Shown here: positions 1-61,134 of the stretch, in pieces
Layout of the letters: each line of letters opens with the position of its first letter
How positions within the stretch are numbered: position 1 is the first letter of the stretch
IMG/VR virus record: IMGVR_UViG_3300031857_000005
Span: 1-64,000 of that record
Reading direction: 5' to 3' (one strand)
Length of the DNA: 64,000 bases
The notes under the pieces: generated by a model
Seen by the model: only the letters and a program-made list of their open reading frames with translations
Told to the model about the DNA's origin: nothing
Databases searched by the model: none
Made by a program: the position numbers and the translations under genes

Positions 1-37
1 AAAAAATATTTCTCAAAATAAAGGATTTTTTTATTAT

Positions 38-361
38 TTGGAAAATAAAACAAATAATCTATATGTTTGGGAATATAACATTAAGAATGCGAATAGAAGT
101 TCCATTGAAAAAAAGACACAAGTCAAATTAATTTATTCCAAACCAAAGAACAATTTGACACTTCCAAAAATAATTGATACGTTTTCAACGTGGTTTTCTG
201 AAGAGGAAAAGTCAAAACTACCTCTTTTTGAGATGAAAAGTAAGGATTTGTTTCCAATAAATGAAACATTATTACCACTTTTCAAACGGAAAGTTATATC
301 TTATATAAATTTAGAAAATTACAACCAAAGAAAAAAAGCGATTCAAATCAAAGTAAATTAA
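38..361 (+). CDS. hypothetical protein
   Basis: 107 aa ORF with TTG start, co-oriented with the downstream operon; no recognisable motif. Confidence 0.5.
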   Translation: MENKTNNLYVWEYNIKNANRSSIEKKTQVKLIYSKPKNNLTLPKIIDTFSTWFSEEEKSKLPLFEMKSKDLFPINETLLPLFKRKVISYINLENYNQRKKAIQIKVN

Positions 362-649
362 TATGGATATTTTAAAAGAAATAAGCAAGATAGTTAAAGA
401 AAATCCAAATGATATGGATTTAGGAAAAAAAATTAGAGTTTTATATACAGAGTTTAAAGAAAAAAAAGATGGGATTTCACAAAAGAAGATTAAAAAAATC
501 TAATATTATTCTTCAAAAAGAAAATATAATTAGGTATCTGAGTGCGGATGCAATATTAATCTCAGATGATTTTTCATACAATGTTTATAAATTGTATAGT
601 GAGGGTAAATCGGAAGAAGAAATCATAAAATATATTAACGAAAATCAAG

Positions 650-1855
650 ATGAAGATTAAATTAGAGTACTTGTGGTTGGACGGATATAATCCAGAACCA
701 AATCTTAGAAGTAAGGTAAAAATTGTAAATTATAATGACGTAAAAAACGCATTTTTAGATGGTAATTTCCCCGAATGGAATTTTGACGGTTCATCAACAC
801 AACAAGCGGAAACTGGTAGTTCGGACTGTATATTAAAACCTGTGAGACATTATAGTTCAGAAATTTTGCAAACTGTGTATATAATGTGTGAGGTTATGAA
901 TCCTGATGGGACTCCACACAAAACAAACACAAGAAGTAATATCGAAAGTGATGATGAAGATATGTGGTTCGGATTTGAACAGGAATATTTCATCTATGAT
1001 AGAAATAATAAATGTATTTTAGGTCACAATGAAAATAATCTTGAACCACAAGGAAAATATTATTGTGGTGTTGGACAATATGTTGCTGGAAGAGACTTTG
1101 TAGAAGAACATTTAAATATGTGTTTGAATTATGGTTTAGATATAACGGGAACAAATGCCGAGGTTGCGATTGGACAATGGGAATACCAAGTCTTTTCAAA
1201 AGGAAAATTAAAGGCTGGTGATGATTTATGGGTGTCCAGATATTTCTTACATAAGTTATCGGAAAAATATGATTATGGTATCGAACTTCACCCAAAACCA
1301 ATCCAAAGAGGAGAATGGAATGGTTCAGGACTTCATACGAATTTTTCATCTAAAAAAATGAGAGAAGAAGGTGGTGAGGAATACTTCAAATCTGTATTCT
1401 CAAGTTTTGAAGCAAGACACCAATCTCATATAGAAAATTATGGTTCAGATAATCAACTACGACTGACTGGTAAGTTTGAGACACAATCAATTGATAAATT
1501 CAGTTGGGGTATATCAGATAGAGGAGCATCAATTCGTGTGCCACAGTCAACCGCAAATGAGTGGAAAGGTTATATTGAAGACAGAAGACCATCTTCAAAT
1601 GCAGATCCTTACAAAATTATATATCAAATTTGTGAATCATTGAGAAATGCTGAAACAATAAATGATATTAAACACAAAATGAACTTTAAACTTGATATGG
1701 ACAATCTTAAGACGGATTTCAAAACATTACCCAATGAGGAACTATTGAAAGAGTATTTGAATGATGAAGAATTTGAATTAGACAGTAAAACGATGGTTGA
1801 TAATAGAAATAATATACCAACTGAAGAAATAAATTTTAACTTGAATGGAAAATAA
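650..1855 (+). CDS. glnII: glutamine synthetase, type II (GSII)
   Basis: EYLWLDG, WNFDGSST.QA, GFEQEY, NAEVA.GQWEYQV, HPKP..G.WNGSG.HTNFS, DRGASIRVP, GYIEDRRPSSNADPY motifs; extra acidic C-terminal tail of about 60 aa. Confidence 0.95.
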   Translation: MKIKLEYLWLDGYNPEPNLRSKVKIVNYNDVKNAFLDGNFPEWNFDGSSTQQAETGSSDCILKPVRHYSSEILQTVYIMCEVMNPDGTPHKTNTRSNIESDDEDMWFGFEQEYFIYDRNNKCILGHNENNLEPQGKYYCGVGQYVAGRDFVEEHLNMCLNYGLDITGTNAEVAIGQWEYQVFSKGKLKAGDDLWVSRYFLHKLSEKYDYGIELHPKPIQRGEWNGSGLHTNFSSKKMREEGGEEYFKSVFSSFEARHQSHIENYGSDNQLRLTGKFETQSIDKFSWGISDRGASIRVPQSTANEWKGYIEDRRPSSNADPYKIIYQICESLRNAETINDIKHKMNFKLDMDNLKTDFKTLPNEELLKEYLNDEEFELDSKTMVDNRNNIPTEEINFNLNGK

Positions 1856-2678
1856 GATAAACATTGATGGTTTAATATTTGGAAAGGGTGAGGGTAATAT
1901 TAGTTGGTATCCTGAAAGGGTTCACACCTTACAAGATTTGGTATATCAGATAAAACCAAGAAACATAATTGAAATTGGTTTTAATGAAGGACATTCAATG
2001 ATTTTAATATGTGAGACACTTTTAAAAATCATTGAAGAAAATCCTGAATTTAATCAGAAACCAATAATAGTCTATGTATTTGATGACTGCAAATATGAAA
2101 GCACGTTTAACAATCATTCAATACTTACAGAACATTATAGAAAGTGGAACATACATTTAAATTTAATTCCTGGTAATTCCCTTGAAGTTGTTCCAAAAGT
2201 TTTAGAAACCTCAAAAATCAAGTTTGATTTCATTGAAATTGATGGATGTCATTTTGAAGAATATGTTAAAGGTGACATTAATAATGTGATTAATTTTATA
2301 AACGATAATGGTATAATATATTTGGATGATTACAAATCCTCAAAAGATCCGACAGAAGGTGTTGATAAAGCAGTTGATTCATTTGACTGGTATGATTTTA
2401 ATACCTATTATATTGACGGAGTGTTTTGGGCACACAAAAAAGAAAAACAAATGACAAACAAAAATGAACAAGTTAATCACCCTAATCACTATGGTGGCGA
2501 AACAAACCAATACGAAGCCATCAAAGTAATTGATGCTTGGGATTTAGGATTTAGTTTGGGAAATACTGTAAAGTATATCTCAAGAGCAGGAAAAAAGAAT
2601 AAAGATAAAGAATTAGAAGATTTGAAGAAAGCCCTTTGGTATCTACAACATCACATTGAAACATTAGAGAAGAAATGA
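1845..2678 (+). CDS. class I SAM methyltransferase (Methyltransf_24-like) fused to a DUF3310-like domain
   Basis: IIEIGFNEGHS, DFIEIDGCH and IIYLDDY in the N-terminal part; VNHPNHY...FSLGNTVKYISRAGKK..EDLKKALWYL in the C-terminal part. Confidence 0.75.
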   Translation: MENKINIDGLIFGKGEGNISWYPERVHTLQDLVYQIKPRNIIEIGFNEGHSMILICETLLKIIEENPEFNQKPIIVYVFDDCKYESTFNNHSILTEHYRKWNIHLNLIPGNSLEVVPKVLETSKIKFDFIEIDGCHFEEYVKGDINNVINFINDNGIIYLDDYKSSKDPTEGVDKAVDSFDWYDFNTYYIDGVFWAHKKEKQMTNKNEQVNHPNHYGGETNQYEAIKVIDAWDLGFSLGNTVKYISRAGKKNKDKELEDLKKALWYLQHHIETLEKK

Positions 2679-3523
2679 TAGAGACAGGAAAAATTATAAA
2701 TGGTGATTGTATTGAGGTAATGAAGACATTACCAAATAGTAGTGTGGATTTAATCGTCACATCACCTCCCTATGGTGTTGGTATTGATTATGATGTTCAC
2801 GAAGACGATGTGGAATTTGAAGACTATTTGGTGTTTGCTAAAAATTGGTTAACTGAAGCGTATAATGTCTTGAAAGACGATGGACGAATCGCGTTGAACA
2901 TCCCATACGAAATCAACAGACAAAAAAAGGGTGGAAGAATATTCTTTGTTTCTGAGATGTGGCAAATAATGAAAGAAATTGGGTTTGGTTTCTTCGGTAT
3001 CGTGGATTTGGAAGAACAATCACCCCATCGTAGTAAGACAACTGCTTGGGGTTCTTGGATGAGTCCAAGTTCACCATATATATATAACCCAAAGGAGTGT
3101 GTGATACTTGCATACAAAAAACACCACATTAAAAAGGTTAAAGGAGAACCTCAGTGGAAAGGGACACCTACTGAAATTGAACAGGAGGATGGAACCATAA
3201 AAAAGAAAGTTGTATATGAAGAACAAGATAAGAAGGAGTTTATGGAACTTGTTTTTGGTCAGTGGAATTACTTTGCAGATACTAAATCACTCACCAAGGC
3301 GACGTTCTCAATGGACATCCCAACTAAAGCGATCAAAATATTATCCTACAAAAACGATGTGATTTTAGATCCATTCGCTGGTAGTGGAACAACATTAGTT
3401 GCCGCTGAAGTATTGGGAAGAAGATGGTTAGGTATTGAGTTATCACCAAACTATACCGAGATAGCCAATACGAGAGTAAATTACTTTAAAACCTTACAGG
3501 AAATAAAAGAAGAACAACTCTAA
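2675..3523 (+). CDS. orphan DNA methyltransferase, N4/N6 family (beta order), probably N4-cytosine
   Basis: DLIVTSPPY catalytic motif precedes the ILDPFAGSGTT SAM-binding motif; GIELS..Y. Confidence 0.9.
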   Translation: MIETGKIINGDCIEVMKTLPNSSVDLIVTSPPYGVGIDYDVHEDDVEFEDYLVFAKNWLTEAYNVLKDDGRIALNIPYEINRQKKGGRIFFVSEMWQIMKEIGFGFFGIVDLEEQSPHRSKTTAWGSWMSPSSPYIYNPKECVILAYKKHHIKKVKGEPQWKGTPTEIEQEDGTIKKKVVYEEQDKKEFMELVFGQWNYFADTKSLTKATFSMDIPTKAIKILSYKNDVILDPFAGSGTTLVAAEVLGRRWLGIELSPNYTEIANTRVNYFKTLQEIKEEQL

Positions 3524-3526
3524 TAT

Positions 3527-3554
3527 AAAACCCACCTTAAAAGTGGGTTTTTTT
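3527..3554 (+). terminator. intrinsic terminator
   Basis: AAAACCCAC-loop-GTGGGTTTT followed by a T run. Confidence 0.85.
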
Positions 3555-55880: not shown

Positions 55881-55888
55881 TTAAGTAT

Positions 55889-56302
55889 ATGAATATACAA
55901 GAAAACATAAGAAGAATATTAAGGGAAATGAGTGATGACTTATATGTTATACAGGATGAAGATAATCTTTTTTTACAAAGTCTTCCTCGTTCTATTAAAA
56001 GAAGAATAACCCATAAAGATTTAAAATGGTTTGATAATAGAATTGATGATTATATTCGTACAGTAACACACAAAGTCGGTTATAATTTATTTAAATCAAT
56101 GGTTCTTGAGGGTATTATCAATGAATTTGTAACTGTATTTAAACTTAATGAATTTTCAGATGAACAAAATGAATGGGGGTTTTTTGAGTATGAATCAGAA
56201 GAATCAAAAAAGGCATTTGATTTGTTTTCTAAATTAAAACCATTTCTTGATGATAAATATGGAAAAAGAATACGACAAGGATGGGAACAAAAAATGAGAT
56301 AG
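55889..56302 (+). CDS. leader-family protein
   Basis: MNIQENIRRILRE; LPRSIKRRI. Confidence 0.8.
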   Translation: MNIQENIRRILREMSDDLYVIQDEDNLFLQSLPRSIKRRITHKDLKWFDNRIDDYIRTVTHKVGYNLFKSMVLEGIINEFVTVFKLNEFSDEQNEWGFFEYESEESKKAFDLFSKLKPFLDDKYGKRIRQGWEQKMR

Positions 56303-56549
56303 AATTAAAGGATTTATTATAATAAAAGAGTATAGACTCAAATCATTCATTCCATCTTACCGTTCGTAAACTCACTACAGATTCCATTCATAATTTTATC
56401 CTATACTCTTTGTTTACAGTAAACAGGTTAGTGTAAACAACTATAACCAAATAAGGATACAACCTTATAATCCATCATTATAAGTCTCCTACCTTATAAT
56501 GTAAAATACTATTAACATTATGTAGGGTATTTGTAAAAAGTATTTCCCC

Positions 56550-56612
56550 CATTTAAATCACTCCACTTCGTTCCGTTCTCCCTCATTTAAATCACTACAC
56601 TTCGTTCCGTTC
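56550..56612. repeat. 29-bp direct repeat x2 in the long non-coding region
   Basis: CATTTAAATCACT(C/A)CACTTCGTTCCGTTC at 56550-56578 and 56584-56612. Confidence 0.9.
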
Positions 56613-57178
56613 CCCATATATAAAAGACAATAGAGTAACACATATAGAAATCCATTGGTGTTCACTAAAAGAGAATGTTCACGGATCGTGAACAAAGGAA
56701 AATAATGAACAGATGAGGGGATTAGTTTTAGTAAACATAAGTGTCATCATATTAGTAAACGTAGTTTATAATGAAATGATGAGGTGAAATGTTATTTACA
56801 AGTGTTGTAAGTATGTCTAAATTTGGAGGGGATATTACTGAAGGATTCCTTAACGGATTCGTTGAAGAACTATTCTAACGACATAAATGTCTGTCCCCCG
56901 CTAGTGGATAGTAACCTTACATTTTTTGCTGGATTTTGTATATAGTAAAAAAAGTGTTGTTCTTGGTACCGATAGAGGGGAAAAATTGACGCCAGACATA
57001 GTGTCAGGGACATTTTGTCAGGTAAATTTAGTTGATTGTGGGAGAGAGTGGGAACATCAAAACCCTGTGAGGGGATTGTCCCGTGTTTAACTCTCGACTG
57101 ACATTTTGACAAAAACAAGTTTTTTAACATAAAAAGTTATTAACAATTCCCCTCTGACGGGGTTAACAAATGTAAATT

Positions 57179-57490
57179 ATGAAAGAATTATTAGATGAAT
57201 TTATATGTACCGTTACTGAAGAAAACCGTACTATAACCCTGACATACTGTCATCCCACTTATTCCCACTCAGGAACTTGTGTATTTGAGTCACACCAAAT
57301 GAAGGGAACCTCCAAACCAATTGTTCAAAAGTTTTTAATCATGACGGGATGTGACATGGGGGATGTGATAGAATATATCTATCAGACAAGGGGATTATCA
57401 GAAAAAGATTTTGATGAGGTGAATATGATTATCAGGGAACACTCAAGGACTATAGTTGAGAAGGAGGATCCAGATCCTCATCAGTCATAA
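57179..57490 (+). CDS. hypothetical protein lacking alanine
   Basis: 103 aa ORF with no Ala, in the GC-dinucleotide-free zone. Confidence 0.55.
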   Translation: MKELLDEFICTVTEENRTITLTYCHPTYSHSGTCVFESHQMKGTSKPIVQKFLIMTGCDMGDVIEYIYQTRGLSEKDFDEVNMIIREHSRTIVEKEDPDPHQS

Positions 57491-57808
57491 TATGTTTTCT
57501 AATATAATTGGACACACAACCATTGGGGAAATACTTCAACATAAGGGAAGATACCAAGATGACAAGGGGAAAGATAATCCCCAATAGAAATAAAATGTAG
57601 AACATAACTAATCCTTAAATAAATAAATGATAAGTCCTGATATGATGAGGGATATGATACACACAACCAACATCCCCACGGTAACAACAGACTTCAACAA
57701 CATAACATAAAGATACAAAACAATTTGTGTTATTCCAACATCTTTTTATAAAAAGATTAAATGTGTGAAACAATTTAAATTACTCCGATATTTATTGTTA
57801 AAAAGATT

Positions 57809-58630
57809 ATGGGAAATTTATTTCAACAAATAAAAGATTCAGTAAAAGGACAGAAAAGTGATTTCTGTTCAAGATCCACAAGGGTTACACTACTAACTCA
57901 AGGTAGAGTTGAGTCAGATGAAATCACATATACAAACTGTTATGGAGTTTCATCAGGGATTACCTATTCTGACATACAACTAAATAATAACTATATCCCC
58001 GACTGTGTTAGAGGGGGAAGTCCAATTGTTTCTAAATCGGGGTATAAATATTTTGTTCAGTATGGAACAACCAATTGTGAAACTCCACCATCAGGGGAGA
58101 ATAAAATATTATTTCCTTGTGCAGGTTTAGGTGAAGTAGTTGTTGATACAACGGGATATAATCTAACACAAGGTAGTATATATGAAATGACACTTAATCC
58201 ATTAAATCCTGGACCAATACCTAGATTACAATGTTTTACAGTTGGAGAACAAACAAATCAACAAGCTGAGTATAACATTATGGGAATCAAGGGAACTGTT
58301 GAAGACTGTAATGTATGTGGAGGTCCACCAAAACCAACTGTAACATTCCCAACTTCAACACCAACACCAACTCTACCTACATATTTTTCATATATAGTTG
58401 GTGATACATCATATAATAATCAAATAGATGCTTGTACGCCAGGTGGGGGAACAATTACTGTTTATTCAAGTACTAATGATCCAATTGTTAATTCAACATT
58501 CTTATATAGTGATATACTATTAACAATACCATACAATTCAGAAGGTTTTGTTTATTACTCAGGAAAAGGAGACTCTGTAATCAGTACGGGATCTGATGGT
58601 AAACTCACAAGTTTTAGTCTTTGTACTTAA
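57809..58630 (+). CDS. Cys/Thr/Pro-rich protein, possibly virion surface
   Basis: paired Cys modules and PTSTPTPTLPT linker; TATTTAT at 57789-57795. Confidence 0.65.
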   Translation: MGNLFQQIKDSVKGQKSDFCSRSTRVTLLTQGRVESDEITYTNCYGVSSGITYSDIQLNNNYIPDCVRGGSPIVSKSGYKYFVQYGTTNCETPPSGENKILFPCAGLGEVVVDTTGYNLTQGSIYEMTLNPLNPGPIPRLQCFTVGEQTNQQAEYNIMGIKGTVEDCNVCGGPPKPTVTFPTSTPTPTLPTYFSYIVGDTSYNNQIDACTPGGGTITVYSSTNDPIVNSTFLYSDILLTIPYNSEGFVYYSGKGDSVISTGSDGKLTSFSLCT

Positions 58631-58634
58631 ATAC

Positions 58635-58668
58635 AATCCCCCACATTACATGGGGGATTTCTTTTTTT
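58635..58668 (+). terminator. intrinsic terminator of ORF 57809-58630, possibly bidirectional
   Basis: AATCCCCCA...TGGGGGATT followed by a T run. Confidence 0.8.
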
Positions 58669-58742
58669 ATATAAGCAGGTTGGAGTCCACCCTCTTAGAG
58701 AAGAACCTGTTTCCCTGACCCGTCTTCGGACTGAACCACTGA
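58635..58742 (-). ncRNA. putative ~100-nt structured small RNA
   Basis: promoter TTTG-N20-TACCTTTG (58778-58747), predicted +1 near 58742; stems UCCG-AAGA-CGGG and CAGGUU...AACCUG; ends in the AATCCCCCA/TGGGGGATT hairpin. Confidence 0.5.
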
Positions 58743-59084
58743 CAATACAAAGGTACGGATTATAATTGACACCACAAAACATTCCCCCATATATTTTATG
58801 TGAGTTATTAACAATGGGGTTGTTTACATATGTAAACTGATAGGGGGAGGTATTACTTATGAACATATGTTAATAACTTAATATCCCCTCCCTCAGATAG
58901 TGGCATACCCCCTATATTGGGGATTACCCCCTCCCCCCTCCCGTATGCCCCCCATATATGACATTTTGACAGGTAAAAAGGGGGGACAATCCCAAAAACA
59001 AAGTATTCGTAAAAAAAATTTTGGAAAAAATTTTTGGTATTTTTCCATTTCTATATTATAGGAATTTTTTATTATATTTGTATT

Positions 59085-59585
59085 ATGGAAAAAATCTGTA
59101 AAAAGTGTGAAACAGAAAAAGAATTGTCTTACTATAGAAAGGGGAGGACTACTTGTAAATTATGTGAAAATAAAATTAGGTATATACAAAAACAGGAAAG
59201 AAGAAAAGTGGATCCCCAATATGACAAAGAAATTAAGTCATATGATGTAATGAGAAAAAGGAAAAAAGAGAAGGAGAATCAACTAACGGGGTTTATTCAG
59301 AAGATGAGACAATCCATTAGAAAATCATTCAAAAGACAAGGGTATACAAAGAACTCAAGAACATATGATATACTTGGGGAATCTTGGGGGAATGTGAAAT
59401 TATATTTTGAGTCTTTATTCCAAGATGGAATGACATGGGATAATCATGGGGAATGGGAGATTGATCACATTATTCCATTATCAACATCCAATTGTGAAGA
59501 AGATGTTATTCGTCTATGTCATTACTCCAATCTTCAACCCCTATGGAAAAAGGATAATAAATTGAAGGGGTGTAAAATTCTGTAG
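59085..59585 (+). CDS. HNH endonuclease with N-terminal Zn finger
   Basis: CKKC...CKLC; GMTWDNHGEWEIDHIIPLS...HYSNLQPLW..DN..KG; TATATTTG-tatt-ATG. Confidence 0.85.
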   Translation: MEKICKKCETEKELSYYRKGRTTCKLCENKIRYIQKQERRKVDPQYDKEIKSYDVMRKRKKEKENQLTGFIQKMRQSIRKSFKRQGYTKNSRTYDILGESWGNVKLYFESLFQDGMTWDNHGEWEIDHIIPLSTSNCEEDVIRLCHYSNLQPLWKKDNKLKGCKIL

Positions 59586-59978
59586 TGTTGTTTATCCCCC
59601 TATATATGTAAAAAAATTCTGGAAAAATTTTTGATAAAATCGGGTATTATGTATATCATTATGATTATGTCTAAACAAAAAAATAAAAAAAGAAATATTA
59701 GGATAGGGGATAATATAATAAGGGTTCCTTCTAAATCAATTAAATTTACTGACTTATATAATGAGTTTGAATTTGCTACTACCAAAGTGGGGGATAAACA
59801 TTATATATTTGAATCATCTTCAGGATATGTAATTGGTCAAGGGGATAGTTACACAAGAGCAAGAAATAACTCAAAGGAATTTCTTAATAGGACTAATGGT
59901 AGATTTTCAGAATTGATTAATTATTTTTTAACCCCTCCAACTAAGTAGGGTTTTTTATTTCCCGTATATTTATCTTAT

Positions 59979-60275
59979 ATGAAAATTATTATCACCGAGA
60001 ATCAAAACGATTTAATAAGACGATACCAATTATTCAAAGATGAGGTATATAAACAAATGGGAACTTCAAACCCTTGTTATTATAATGATTACTTTGATTT
60101 TGACAGATACAAACGGGATATGATAAATTCCTCAATTAATGAGGTTGTTGGTGATTTGGGTATTGATGAAAGAATATTGACAACATTCAAAGGTGAATTA
60201 TTAAATGAGTTACTTGGTATTATTAGAAGATACTACAATAAATTCCTTAAGGAGAACTGTCGTCCAAGATGGTAA
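59979..60275 (+). CDS. leader-family protein (MKIIITENQ)
   Basis: TATTTAT at 59967-59973; LIRR...PCYY module. Confidence 0.8.
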   Translation: MKIIITENQNDLIRRYQLFKDEVYKQMGTSNPCYYNDYFDFDRYKRDMINSSINEVVGDLGIDERILTTFKGELLNELLGIIRRYYNKFLKENCRPRW

Positions 60276-60293
60276 TGTAATATATTTATCTAT

Positions 60294-60620
60294 ATGAAGA
60301 TTATTATAACGGAAGAACAATATGACAATTTATATTTAAGGAGAAGATTGTCTGATATAATGGATGAAGGATTATTCTTAATTGATAATGCCCATAATCT
60401 TTATAGGGGTACTGACTTTTGTGAACATTACCCCACTCTTAAGATATTCATGGAAGGTTTTATTGAGGACATTATAAATCAATATTATAATATGACTGGT
60501 GATGATATACGGGAATTTATCTATGATTATATTGGGCAAGAAAACTTTATTGATATGTTGCTTGATGTTCATGGTGAGGAGATTGAAACCTTATATAATG
60601 AAATAACAAAAGATTGTTAA
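60294..60620 (+). CDS. leader-family protein (MKIIITEEQ) with RRR module
   Basis: TATTTAT at 60283-60289; LYLRRRL...FCEHY. Confidence 0.8.
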   Translation: MKIIITEEQYDNLYLRRRLSDIMDEGLFLIDNAHNLYRGTDFCEHYPTLKIFMEGFIEDIINQYYNMTGDDIREFIYDYIGQENFIDMLLDVHGEEIETLYNEITKDC

Positions 60621-60719
60621 TATAACATCACCCCCCATCTCTAATTTATCCCCCATATCTCAAAAAAAAATTTCCAGAAAAATTTTCAGAAAATCCGAGT
60701 ATTTATAATAAAAGATACT

Positions 60720-61058
60720 ATGAAAAAATTTATTATAACAGAAGAAGAAAAAAGTAGAATCTTGGGTATGCACAAATCATACGCATCAATGATTAACGAA
60801 CAAGTGTTAACCGATGAAGAAGTACAAAATCGTTTAGCGGTTTTATATATAATGAAAACACAAAAATTAGATAAACTAAAGTCAGAAAACTATTTAAAAA
60901 ATGAGGGTGGTTATGACAACTTTATTACAGGATTTGATGGACAAAATGAGCCTTATATGGATTGGTTAAAATCTATAGGGTTAGAAAGAGGTGATGTTTA
61001 TATTGATGGTGGTAATAGAGATCGTGTTTTAACTAAATTAAAAGAACTTGAAAAATAA
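60720..61058 (+). CDS. leader-family protein (ITEEEK.RIL.MH type)
   Basis: MKKFIITEEEKSRILGMHK...INE; TATTTAT at 60700-60706. Confidence 0.8.
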   Translation: MKKFIITEEEKSRILGMHKSYASMINEQVLTDEEVQNRLAVLYIMKTQKLDKLKSENYLKNEGGYDNFITGFDGQNEPYMDWLKSIGLERGDVYIDGGNRDRVLTKLKELEK

Positions 61059-61081
61059 ATAAAAGTCATTTTATAATTATT

Positions 61082-61107
61082 AACCCCTCCAGTTAGAGGG
61101 GTTTTTT
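61082..61107 (+). terminator. intrinsic terminator
   Basis: AACCCCTC...GAGGGGTT followed by a T run. Confidence 0.8.
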
Positions 61108-61134
61108 ATTTTTCCATATATTTATCTTTATACC

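What the first reader, a model, noticed from the sequence alone, without database searches (positions are those of the whole stretch)
56215..60760. A 4.5 kb zone nearly free of the GC dinucleotide, including 1128 nt with none
Seen by manual scan: no 5'-GC-3' between 56993 and 58120 although about 10 CG occur there, none in about 56215-56899 or 58949-59774, and only about 14 in the whole 4.5 kb. Proteins here lack Ala altogether (57179 ORF, HNH 59085, 59979). Elsewhere GC seems largely confined to Ala codons (about 13 in the 1.2 kb GS gene). Established: phages such as T5 and T7 purge restriction sites from the DNA that enters the cell first. Inference: this is the first-injected end or terminal repeat, under selection against GC-recognising host nucleases strong enough to alter protein composition.
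Basis: partly seen in the sequence, partly recalled or inferred. Interest (0 to 1): 0.7.

Follow-up and report, generated by a model that had tools for sequence, protein, structure and literature searches.

The report
GC-free regulatory island in jumbo phage
A 4.5 kb stretch almost free of the dinucleotide GC is real: it is a conserved, mostly regulatory island in a 300 kb lake phage that avoids GC everywhere, but nothing shows that it is the first DNA injected.

Summary
Window 56215-60760 holds 15 GC (about 116 expected from base composition, about 50 from genome-wide rates). It contains the longest GC-free gap (1130 nt) and the lowest rho(GC) of the whole 304 kb contig.

Two points change the picture.

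1. The whole phage avoids GC at the DNA level. Rho(GC) is 0.54, against 1.0-1.2 in AT-rich Bacteroidota DNA. GC is scarcest at synonymous and codon-junction positions (0.20 and 0.31 of expectation). Ala makes up 3.4% of residues, and none of the 24 tRNAs is a tRNA-Ala.

2. The zone coincides with a compositional island that also has the genome's highest density of GGGG/CCCC runs. It holds the largest non-tRNA non-coding stretch, promoter-like modules found almost nowhere else in the genome, one conserved gene (57179-57490), and swappable ORFan and HNH cassettes. The same GC-poor, run-rich island surrounds homologues of that gene in 17 related viral contigs.

Palindromes that lack GC or CG are no scarcer inside the zone than elsewhere. 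Unitig depth shows no doubled repeat. The large terminase is T4 gp17-like, which suggests headful packaging. The "first-injected end" reading is therefore unsupported and could not be tested on raw reads.

Most likely this is a regulatory, hyperplastic island where a genome-wide purge of GC, probably driven by host nucleases, meets the least protein constraint.

The parts
56215..60760 (.). The GC-poor zone. It coincides with a compositional island: genome minimum of rho(GC), rho*(CG) 0.39, and genome maximum of G>=4/C>=4 runs.
56303..57178 (+). 876-nt non-coding leader, the largest non-tRNA stretch without a conserved ORF. The minus-strand ORF 56870-57130 has no ORF counterpart of 60 aa or more at the syntenic place in relative L090. 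The leader holds only 3 GC; 56900 and 56928 lie in columns invariant in 4 relatives, and 56991 is shared only with the closest one.
56545..56612 (+). Tandem 34-nt direct repeat (2 copies, 94% alike).
   Evidence: (family D9)
56848..57010 (+). Conserved non-coding block A. It contains a small hairpin with compensatory changes between relatives and the invariant words TTGCTGG and AGAGGGGAAAAAT.
57096..57178 (+). Conserved promoter-like leader of gene 57179, with core CTGACATTTTGACA followed by an A/T-rich box and TCCCC just before the ATG. It is 97% identical to the distant relative G001 and is present at -57 or -80 in most of 17 relatives.
57179..57490 (+). The only island protein conserved across the family (103 aa, no Ala). 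More than 150 metagenomic homologue clusters exist, all unnamed. The fold prediction is confident (pLDDT 86.8) but has no PDB match.
57491..57808 (+). Non-coding spacer with a G4/C4 hairpin (57566/57579) and a 42-nt direct repeat (57718-57809).
57809..58630 (+). ORFan of 273 aa (3 Ala) with no Pfam or PHROG match. It is absent from the relatives examined.
58635..58659 (+). Terminator-like hairpin whose stem is a C5 run paired with a G5 run, followed by a T-run.
58906..59037 (+). Conserved non-coding block C. It contains a C-run cluster (a G-quadruplex/i-motif-type sequence on the other strand, 58927-58953), a conserved C6...G6 stem (58948-58985) around TATAT-GACATTTTGACA, and the first A-rich box.
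59014..59033 (+). A-rich promoter-like box, copy 1 of 3. All 3 copies in the genome lie in the zone, each 17-52 nt before a start codon.
59085..59585 (+). HNH / endonuclease VII-like homing endonuclease (166 aa, no Ala, 7 of 9 Gly encoded by GGG). It is absent from co-occurring strain variants.
59596..59631 (+). C-box (CCCCCTATAT) plus A-rich box, copy 2 of the promoter-like module.
59649..59948 (+). ORFan of 99 aa (2 Ala).
59911..59976 (+). Composite of terminator hairpin and promoter-like box (PeSL-like). It recurs at 61063-61128, and similar copies lie near 3541, 63710 and 65814.
   Evidence: family D2
59979..60275 (+). ORFan of 98 aa (no Ala). It shares the N-terminal start MKIIITE with the next gene.
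   Evidence: family D10
60294..60620 (+). ORFan of 108 aa (1 Ala). It begins with the same MKIIITE start as 59979-60275 (35-nt direct repeat, 77% alike); tblastn found no wider similarity.
60622..60719 (+). Intergenic promoter-like module, copy 3 (C-box at 60651, A-rich box at 60667). This marks the right edge of the island.

Best explanation
The window is the first 64 kb of an uncultivated lake jumbo myophage of about 301 kb, probably with a Bacteroidota host. Its DNA shows no sign of hypermodification. The whole genome avoids the GC dinucleotide and short palindromes at the DNA level.

The 4.5-kb zone is the extreme point of that avoidance. It is a conserved regulatory and hyperplastic island with these parts:
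- a long non-coding leader;
- a near-invariant promoter-like element in front of the one conserved gene (57179-57490);
- a second conserved leader (58906-59037);
- three copies of a promoter-like module found nowhere else in the genome;
- hairpins;
- small ORFan and HNH cassettes that are swapped between strains at these repeats.

In this island G and C occur almost only as G-runs and C-runs. These appear in stems, in G-run/A-tract junctions, and in GGG, AGG and CCC codons, so G-C and C-G junctions hardly arise. The island's poorly constrained little proteins have lost nearly all Ala.

Shown:
- the depletion itself;
- that it acts at the DNA level in all codon phases;
- that it is specific to the phage;
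- that the GC-poor, run-rich island is conserved around the same gene in relatives;
- that cassettes turn over between strains.

Inferred:
- that the genome-wide purge is selection by host nucleases on unmodified DNA;
- that the island is the control region for early expression.

Not shown: any link to the order of DNA entry.
For: Genome-wide DNA-level avoidance:
- Rho(GC) is 0.535.
- NGC codons are 2-6% of NGY, the G|C codon junction stands at 0.31, and non-coding rho is 0.48.
- Phase-specific observed/expected is 0.60, 0.20 and 0.31, against 0.69-1.31 in AT-rich Bacteroidota loci.
- Candidate host-lineage DNA has rho(GC) 1.0-1.2 even at 28-33% G+C.
- ACGT, CTAG, TCGA, GCGC, GGCC, AGCT and CGCG stand at 0.13-0.20 of expectation. 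ACATGT occurs 0 times against 207 expected.
- The phage has no C5-methyltransferase and no DpdA/TGT. Flavobacterium phage immuto carries DpdA and Que genes and has rho(GC) 0.96 and AGCT 1.31.
- Ala rises with gene length and conservation: 1.75% below 100 aa and 3.98% above 500 aa, and 3.56% in conserved genes against 2.84% in the rest (p=2e-4).

The island:
- It has 39 G4/C4 runs per 3 kb against a median of 5.
- The motifs are confined to it: A-rich box 3 of 3 copies, C-box 6 of 7, GACA-box 3 of 7.
- GGG is 29% of Gly codons there against 11% genome-wide, and AGG is 33% of AGR against 13%.
- Conserved non-coding blocks are shared with relatives.
- In the complete relative G001 the syntenic island is again the genome minimum of rho(GC) (0.29 against a median of 0.62) and the maximum of runs (58 against 12).
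- In 17 relatives anchored on the homologue of 57179, median rho(GC) is 0.27-0.35 inside against about 0.5 in the flanks. Runs number 10-19 inside against 2 per 1.5 kb outside.
- Strain variants skip 58971->59610 (the HNH cassette), 59632->60725 and 59995->60660.
Against: - No host is known, and no restriction or methylation data exist. Nuclease selection is therefore an inference.
- Across 62 related loci, Ala% does not track off-frame GC avoidance (Spearman -0.29, and -0.12 for the sheath loci alone). The step from GC avoidance to low Ala is not shown.
- Weak protein constraint alone does not reach the zone's level. Small and non-conserved genes have a median rho(GC) of 0.39-0.45, against 0.13 in the zone.
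- Why the island is built from G-runs and C-runs, and why its synonymous sites share that bias, is not explained. A locus-specific mutational or selective force, including early exposure to nucleases, could account for it.
- Promoter function is inferred only from position, repetition and conservation. There are no transcription data. The RNA-library contigs only show that the conserved blocks occur in relatives.
Confidence: 0.5

Rival explanations
1. The zone is the leading (first-injected) end or a terminal repeat. It is exposed to host nucleases before any phage protection is made, and so it has been purged of GC-containing sites more strongly than the rest.
For: - The zone is the genome minimum of rho(GC), and CG is also low there.
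- The dip is conserved in relatives, which points to selection tied to the locus.
- A cluster of unique, conserved promoter-like elements, small ORFans and high variability is what leading regions of some phages look like. PMC12455610 reports this for Autographiviridae, and T5 and T7 are known examples.
- The island's synonymous sites share the compositional bias.
Against: - Palindromes without GC or CG that are avoided genome-wide (CATG 0.30, CTAG 0.14) are not scarcer in the zone.
- Unitig depth is not doubled across the zone.
- The zone is not at a contig end. The contig ends are an 81% diverged duplicate, and relative G001 closes on itself.
- The large terminase is of the T4 gp17 kind, which usually means headful packaging without a fixed end.
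- In relatives CG is not depleted in the island.
- No recognisable anti-restriction gene is present.
Confidence: 0.12
2. The island is a cis-acting nucleic-acid element, such as a replication origin primed by an R-loop or a long structured RNA or leader. Its G-run/C-run architecture is the selected feature. The lack of GC and CG is then only a by-product of that architecture.
For: - Non-coding blocks are better conserved than the flanking genes.
- The C6...G6 stem and the AGAGGGGAA...TTCCCCTCT pairing are conserved in all 4 genomes.
- A G-quadruplex-type C-run cluster at 58927-58953 is conserved.
- The 876-nt leader folds better than shuffles (z = -2.9), and 9 of 45 predicted pairs show compensatory changes.
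Against: - There is no Rfam match.
- The second non-coding stretch folds no better than shuffles (z = -1.2).
- The strongest conserved pairs never vary, so they say nothing either way. Only 4 sequences were aligned.
- The run enrichment also covers coding DNA of non-conserved cassettes.
- It does not explain the genome-wide GC avoidance.
Confidence: 0.15
3. A mutational cause. Cytosine methylation at GpC by a host or phage enzyme is followed by deamination, or a locus-specific mutagenic process erodes GC without selection.
For: - Relatives differ in which dinucleotide is low. Some have CG at 0.37-0.40 with GC at 0.8, others GC at 0.53 with CG at 0.85. Different methylation regimes would produce this.
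- The depletion affects all codon phases and non-coding DNA.
Against: - The phage has no C5-methyltransferase.
- The lost GCs are balanced by GG/CC (1.37), not by GT/AC.
- At GC sites that differ from relatives, the replacements are a mixture (AC, GT, TC, GG, GA) with only about 40-45% transitions.
- Candidate host DNA is not GC-poor.
Confidence: 0.08
4. A protein-level or translation-level cause. The phage avoids alanine, for instance because host tRNA-Ala is limiting or is attacked during infection. GC is then rare only because GCN codons are rare.
For: - Ala is 3.4% of residues.
- There is no tRNA-Ala among 24 phage tRNAs.
- About 82% of coding GCs are Ala codons.
Against: - GC is most strongly avoided where Ala is not involved: phase 2-3 at 0.20, the codon junction at 0.31, and non-coding DNA at 0.48.
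- 6 of the zone's 15 GCs, and most of its deficit outside genes, are non-coding.
Confidence: 0.03
5. Chance, or an assembly or chimera artefact.
For: None beyond the fact that this is a metagenome assembly whose two ends are diverged copies of each other.
Against: - Poisson 9e-9.
- The zone is the lowest of 1200 windows.
- An identical sequence occurs in an independent contig and in many runs.
- The feature is conserved in 17 relatives.
Confidence: 0.01

Closest known systems
Avoidance of restriction sites and short palindromes in phage genomes (classical; from my own knowledge)
   Same: 4-bp palindromes stand at 0.13-0.30 of expectation and ACATGT is absent. The bias is absent from candidate host-lineage DNA. 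It is also absent from a Bacteroidota phage that carries DNA-modification genes.
   Different: The avoidance extends to the bare dinucleotide GC in non-palindromic contexts: GCTA 0.21, AAGC 0.33, AGCC 0.36. It goes with a low alanine content. No host enzyme is known that would explain a 2-bp target.
Leading or first-injected regions cleared of restriction motifs (T5 first-step-transfer DNA and the T7 early region, from my own knowledge; Autographiviridae, PMC12455610)
   Same: A variable region of small genes with its own promoters and a local minimum of potential nuclease targets.
   Different: No terminus or terminal repeat is shown. The terminase is of the T4 gp17 kind. Palindromes without GC or CG are not further depleted. 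No anti-restriction gene is recognisable.
Hyperplastic regions of T4-type phages with PeSL terminator-promoter cassettes (PMC2839356, PMC4122927)
   Same: Small ORFan genes are separated by repeated composites of stem-loop and promoter-like box. Differences between strains are insertions, deletions or replacements bounded by those repeats.
   Different: The phage is not a T4-like virus; its terminase is 24-28% identical. The motifs are unrelated in sequence. The compositional signature (no GC or CG, many G-runs and C-runs) and its conservation across the family have no counterpart that I know of in T4.
CpG depletion in vertebrate RNA viruses under ZAP, and short-site enzymes of chlorella viruses (R.CviJI RGCY, M.CviPI GpC) (from my own knowledge)
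   Same: These are examples of defence or modification acting on 2-4-nt words, strong enough to shape a whole viral genome. All four RGCY words are at 0.14-0.36 here.
   Different: These are analogies only. No such enzyme was sought or found in a host, and YGCR and RGCR words are depleted too.

Membership tests
Restriction-site / palindrome avoidance | Short palindromes are under-represented relative to base composition and to lower-order words. | tested here: met
   ACGT, CTAG, TCGA, GCGC, GGCC, AGCT and CGCG stand at 0.13-0.20 (0.22-0.79 against the Markov expectation). CATG is at 0.30. ACATGT occurs 0 times against 207 expected.
Restriction-site / palindrome avoidance | The avoided words are recognition sites of the host's own restriction systems. 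| not testable with these tools
   The host is unknown. Only a lineage hint is available: glutamine synthetase best hits are Saprospiraceae at 55-58%.
Restriction-site / palindrome avoidance | The bias is specific to the phage, that is, not a shared mutational background of the host lineage. | tested here: met
   AT-rich Bacteroidota loci have rho(GC) 1.0-1.2 and off-frame GC 0.69-1.31. This is indirect, because these are candidate lineages and not the host.
Leading (first-injected) region / terminal repeat | The genome has fixed physical ends, and the zone lies at one of them or inside a terminal repeat. | tested here: inconclusive
   Only contigs of the runs are held, so read starts cannot be examined. 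Depth is not doubled across the zone. The contig ends are elsewhere and are 81% alike. The terminase is gp17-like.
Leading (first-injected) region / terminal repeat | Every kind of nuclease target avoided in the genome is depleted further in the zone. | tested here: not met
   GATC, CATG, CTAG and GTAC stand at 0.49 in the zone, which is the genome median. 6-bp palindromes without GC or CG stand at 0.82 against 0.64 genome-wide.
Leading (first-injected) region / terminal repeat | The zone encodes recognisable anti-defence functions. | tested here: not met
   Pfam and PHROGs match nothing except an HNH / endonuclease VII-like protein. 57179 has no fold match. The ORFans could still be anti-defence genes.
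T4-type hyperplastic region with PeSLs | Composite terminator stem-loop plus promoter motifs are repeated between small genes. | tested here: met
   (families D2, D3).
T4-type hyperplastic region with PeSLs | Differences between close genomes are indels or replacements bounded by the motifs. | tested here: met
   Joints 58971->59610, 58993->59610, 59632->60725 and 59995->60660 appear in co-occurring strains. Synteny with L090 is patchy.
T4-type hyperplastic region with PeSLs | The phage belongs to the T4-like myoviruses, and the promoter is the T4 early type. | tested here: not met
   The terminase is only 24-28% identical to gp17. PolB is nearest to those of Salinibacter and Nostoc phages at 23-25%. 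The motifs are unrelated to PeSLs.
HNH homing endonuclease (59085-59585) | Sequence match to an HNH / endonuclease VII family, and presence/absence polymorphism between strains. | tested here: met
   phrog_1035, E = 6e-19. Variants lacking the cassette appear in 2 runs. Cleavage activity is not testable here.

The most novel reading that the evidence does not exclude
A defence of the (Bacteroidota?) hosts acts on words as short as GC, for example a CviJI-like RGCY nuclease or a set of GC-core enzymes. It has driven a whole family of unmodified lake jumbo phages of about 300 kb to purge GC. The purge has gone far enough to cut alanine by about 40% and to make a tRNA-Ala dispensable. The conserved GC-free, G-run/C-run island around gene 57179 would be the most exposed DNA: the early control region, and possibly the leading region. 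It would be written in a sequence grammar that supplies G+C without ever placing G next to C.
Probability: 0.2. Interest if true: 0.75.

Novelty: new variant of a known kind. Interest (0 to 1): 0.55.

Why it matters
Phages are known to avoid specific restriction sites. Here an entire 300 kb genome avoids a bare dinucleotide, with an unusually low alanine content alongside. One conserved locus shows that several kilobases of genes, promoters and hairpins can be written with almost no GC. If a host nuclease is the cause, this family gives a sequence-only read-out of an unknown defence in uncultivated freshwater bacteria. It also marks a locus where selection is strongest.

Separately, the island defines a conserved control region that no current library recognises. 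It has a near-invariant promoter-like leader and a conserved 103-aa protein of unknown fold. It is an obvious first target for transcript mapping in this phage group.

Tried and rejected
- **Terminus mapping.** Both read-laying runs returned only Logan contigs, so read starts and true coverage steps could not be seen. The RNA-library runs held only short conserved blocks from relatives and do not show transcription.
- **Close relatives among cultured phages.** There is no megablast match. PolB and the terminase are only 23-28% identical to anything cultured.
- **Known RNA families.** Rfam found nothing in 55.5-61.5 kb.
- **Function of gene 57179.** Pfam, PHROGs and the protein atlas gave nothing. 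The AlphaFold model is confident, but Foldseek against the PDB found no match (best E = 0.2).
- **A specific GC-containing motif.** Spacing between GCs shows only the 3-nt codon periodicity and a deficit of GCGC. On the sense strand both AGC (0.25) and GCT (0.39) are low, so a GCU-specific RNase signature is not seen.
- **Deamination signature.** Not found.
- **Donor of the HNH cassette.** The nearest relatives are at most 46% identical.
- **Link between Ala and GC avoidance across relatives.** There is no positive correlation.
- **Literature.** A search for GpC under-representation in phages found nothing relevant.

Full report
**What the window is.** The window is the first 64 kb of a single 304,365-bp contig. 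It is a jumbo myophage from lake metagenomes.
- It encodes a tail sheath, PolB and ribonucleotide reductase, and a Terminase_6N large terminase at 130406-132184.
- It carries 24 tRNAs, none of them for Ala.
- G+C is 31%.
- It has no close cultured relative, but hundreds of related contigs exist in IMG/VR.
- Many lake-water runs hold the zone nearly word for word, and an independent contig is identical over 20 kb.
- Three things point to a Bacteroidota host: the absence of Shine-Dalgarno sequences before the genes (read), the best cellular matches of its glutamine synthetase (Saprospiraceae, 55-58%), and the nearest cultured terminase (Flavobacterium phage immuto). This is an inference.

**The observation.**
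- There are 15 GC in 56215-60760, against 116 expected from base composition.
- There is no GC in 56992-58120, where 10 CG occur, nor in 56214-56899 or 58948-59774.
- Three proteins have no Ala.
- The glutamine synthetase gene has 13 GC, 11 of them in Ala codons.
- The 1130-nt gap is the longest in the genome, where 0.002 of that length are expected.
- The zone is the lowest of 1200 sliding windows, with rho 0.11-0.17 against a median of 0.53.
- Measured against the genome's own coding and non-coding GC rates, 49.6 are expected (Poisson 9e-9).

**The background is itself unusual.** GC is rare everywhere in this phage, with rho 0.535.
- Conditioned on position-specific base composition, GC stands at 0.60 of expectation in codon phase 1-2 (Ala), 0.20 in phase 2-3 and 0.31 across codon junctions. 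In non-coding DNA it stands at 0.48.
- AT-rich Bacteroidota loci give 0.87-1.02, 0.69-1.01 and 0.83-1.31 for the three phases, with an overall rho(GC) of 1.0-1.2.
- The depletion is therefore specific to the phage, acts on the nucleic acid, and is strongest where it costs the protein nothing.
- Ala is 3.4% of residues, against 5.0-6.1% in comparators of the same G+C. It rises with gene length and conservation.
- The genome also avoids nearly every G/C-containing 4-bp palindrome (0.13-0.30) and has no ACATGT.
- It encodes no C5-methyltransferase and no DpdA. Flavobacterium phage immuto carries a 7-deazaguanine pathway and shows neither bias.
- Replacements at GC sites relative to close relatives are a mixture, with no deamination signature.
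- Among relatives, some avoid CG rather than GC. This suggests a fast-changing, host-specific pressure.
- I read all this as selection by host nucleases on unmodified DNA, but that step is inferred.
- One test failed to support the last link: across related loci Ala content does not follow off-frame GC avoidance.

**What is special about the zone.** It coincides with a compositional island.
- It has the genome's highest density of G>=4 and C>=4 runs (39 per 3 kb against a median of 5). Its GG/CC is above the 99th percentile and its CG is below the 1st. G+C is slightly raised.
- G and C are thus present, but almost never adjacent to each other.
- The bias reaches synonymous sites. GGG is 29% of Gly codons against 11% genome-wide, and AGG is 33% of AGR against 13%.
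- The island holds the largest non-tRNA non-coding stretch (56303-57178). It also holds further gaps at 57491-57808 and 58631-59084, hairpins whose stems are C-runs paired with G-runs, and a tandem 34-nt repeat.
- Its sequence motifs are practically confined to it. An A-rich box has 3 of 3 genome copies there, each just before a start codon. A CCCC-TATAT box has 6 of 7, and GACATTTTGACA has 3 of 7.
- Of the 15 remaining GCs, 6 are Ala codons, 3 are codon junctions and 6 are non-coding. Two of the non-coding ones, in the leader at 56900 and 56928, sit in columns invariant across relatives.

**Conservation.** The island is ancestral and is not a recent import.
- Only one of its proteins, 57179-57490, is conserved in relatives. 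That protein has more than 150 metagenomic homologue clusters, all unnamed. It has a confident predicted fold with no PDB match.
- Its upstream leader is nearly invariant in relatives whose protein is only 30-60% identical. A second non-coding block (58906-59037) is also conserved.
- In the complete 322-kb relative G001, the syntenic island is again both the genome minimum of rho(GC) and the maximum of G/C runs.
- Across 17 relatives anchored on the homologue, median rho(GC) falls from about 0.5 to 0.27-0.35, and runs rise from 2 to 10-19 per 1.5 kb. CG is not lowered there.
- The other genes turn over. Co-occurring strains lack the HNH cassette and differ by replacements bounded by the promoter-like repeats. 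This resembles the PeSL-bounded hyperplastic regions of T4-type phages (PMC2839356, PMC4122927).

**Is it the first-injected end?** Nothing supports this.
- Palindromes that contain neither GC nor CG are strongly avoided genome-wide, yet are exactly as frequent in the zone as elsewhere. CATG is, if anything, more frequent there.
- Unitig depth in four metagenomes is not doubled over the zone. Only 57104-58704 is raised, which fits a segment shared by several strains.
- The contig's two ends lie elsewhere and are 81% identical 3.3-kb copies. This looks like an assembly that ran round a circular map into a second strain, or like an old duplication. The relative G001 closes on itself.
- The terminase is of the T4 gp17 kind, which usually goes with headful packaging and permuted ends. 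This is established knowledge applied by inference.
- Physical termini could not be mapped, because all runs are held as contigs only.

**Best reading and rivals.**
- **Best reading (0.5).** The zone is a conserved regulatory, hyperplastic island. A genome-wide purge of GC, probably driven by nucleases, meets the least protein constraint there, and G+C is carried by homopolymer runs.
- **What this does not explain.** The run-based grammar, and why the dip exceeds that of other small-gene regions (median rho 0.39-0.45), remain unexplained. That leaves room for a force tied to the locus.
- **Rivals.** A cis-acting origin or structured RNA (0.15). The leading-end idea (0.12). A mutational cause (0.08). 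Avoidance of alanine as such (0.03). Chance or artefact (0.01).

**Verdict.** I file it as a new variant of known kinds, namely site avoidance and hyperplastic regions. It has two features I have not seen described: avoidance of a bare dinucleotide, and a family-conserved island free of GC and rich in G-runs and C-runs.

Noticed in passing
window 1-3269 and G000:C1:301099-304365: The two ends of the contig are co-linear copies of each other at only 81% identity. They include a second, cut-off N6/N4 methyltransferase gene. This is either an assembly that wrapped round a circular map into another strain, or an old 3.3-kb duplication. The true genome length is probably about 301 kb.
   Followed up: partly
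G000:C1:102951-114715 (outside the window): A cluster of 24 tRNA genes covers 18 amino acids, with no tRNA-Ala and no clear tRNA-Ser. One odd 93-nt gene (112117-112209) has a long variable arm and a 6-nt anticodon loop. ARAGORN also calls a doubtful tmRNA at 120178-120580. The relative G001 has only 5 tRNAs.
   Followed up: partly
window 46421, 47205, 53511, 53844, 54202, 54642, 55073, 55533, 55889 (gene starts): A tandem array of small paralogous genes shares a conserved N-terminus (MKELIRHI.KEE or MN.QENIRR.LRE) and a conserved stretch of about 40 nt at the 5' end. In four metagenomes the summed contig depth at 55888-56084 is 20-100 times that of the flanks. This short stretch is therefore shared by very many co-occurring phages and may be a recombination point.
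   Followed up: partly
window 59911-59976, 61063-61128, near 3541, 63710; G000:C1 near 65814: A composite of a CCCCTCC...GGGG(T) hairpin, a T-run and a TATATTTATCTT box recurs between small genes across the first 66 kb. It resembles the PeSL elements of T4-type phages.
   Followed up: partly
whole genome: ACATGT occurs 0 times against about 207 expected on both strands. ACGT, CTAG and TCGA are each at 0.13 of expectation. This points to several distinct restriction specificities in the host range.
   Followed up: partly
window 58927-58953: A C5-T-C6-T-C3-N5-C6 cluster gives a canonical G-quadruplex motif on the minus strand and an i-motif on the plus strand. It is conserved in all four genomes compared and lies directly upstream of the conserved TATAT-GACATTTTGACA element.
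   Followed up: no
window 2744-3469; G000:C1:279130-279846: The phage encodes two full N6/N4 DNA methyltransferases (PF01555) but no C5-methyltransferase. Their target sites are unknown and could explain why some palindromes (GATC 0.74, GTAC 0.78, AATT, TTAA) are not avoided.
   Followed up: no
window 57104-58704: This 1.6-kb unitig (gene 57179 and most of the 273-aa ORFan) has 1.5-2.5 times the word depth of its neighbours in four metagenomes. It is therefore either shared unchanged by several strains or present twice.
   Followed up: no
window 650-1855: A short (401 aa) glutamine synthetase gene in a phage. Its best cellular matches are Saprospiraceae and other Bacteroidota at 51-58% identity.
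   Followed up: partly
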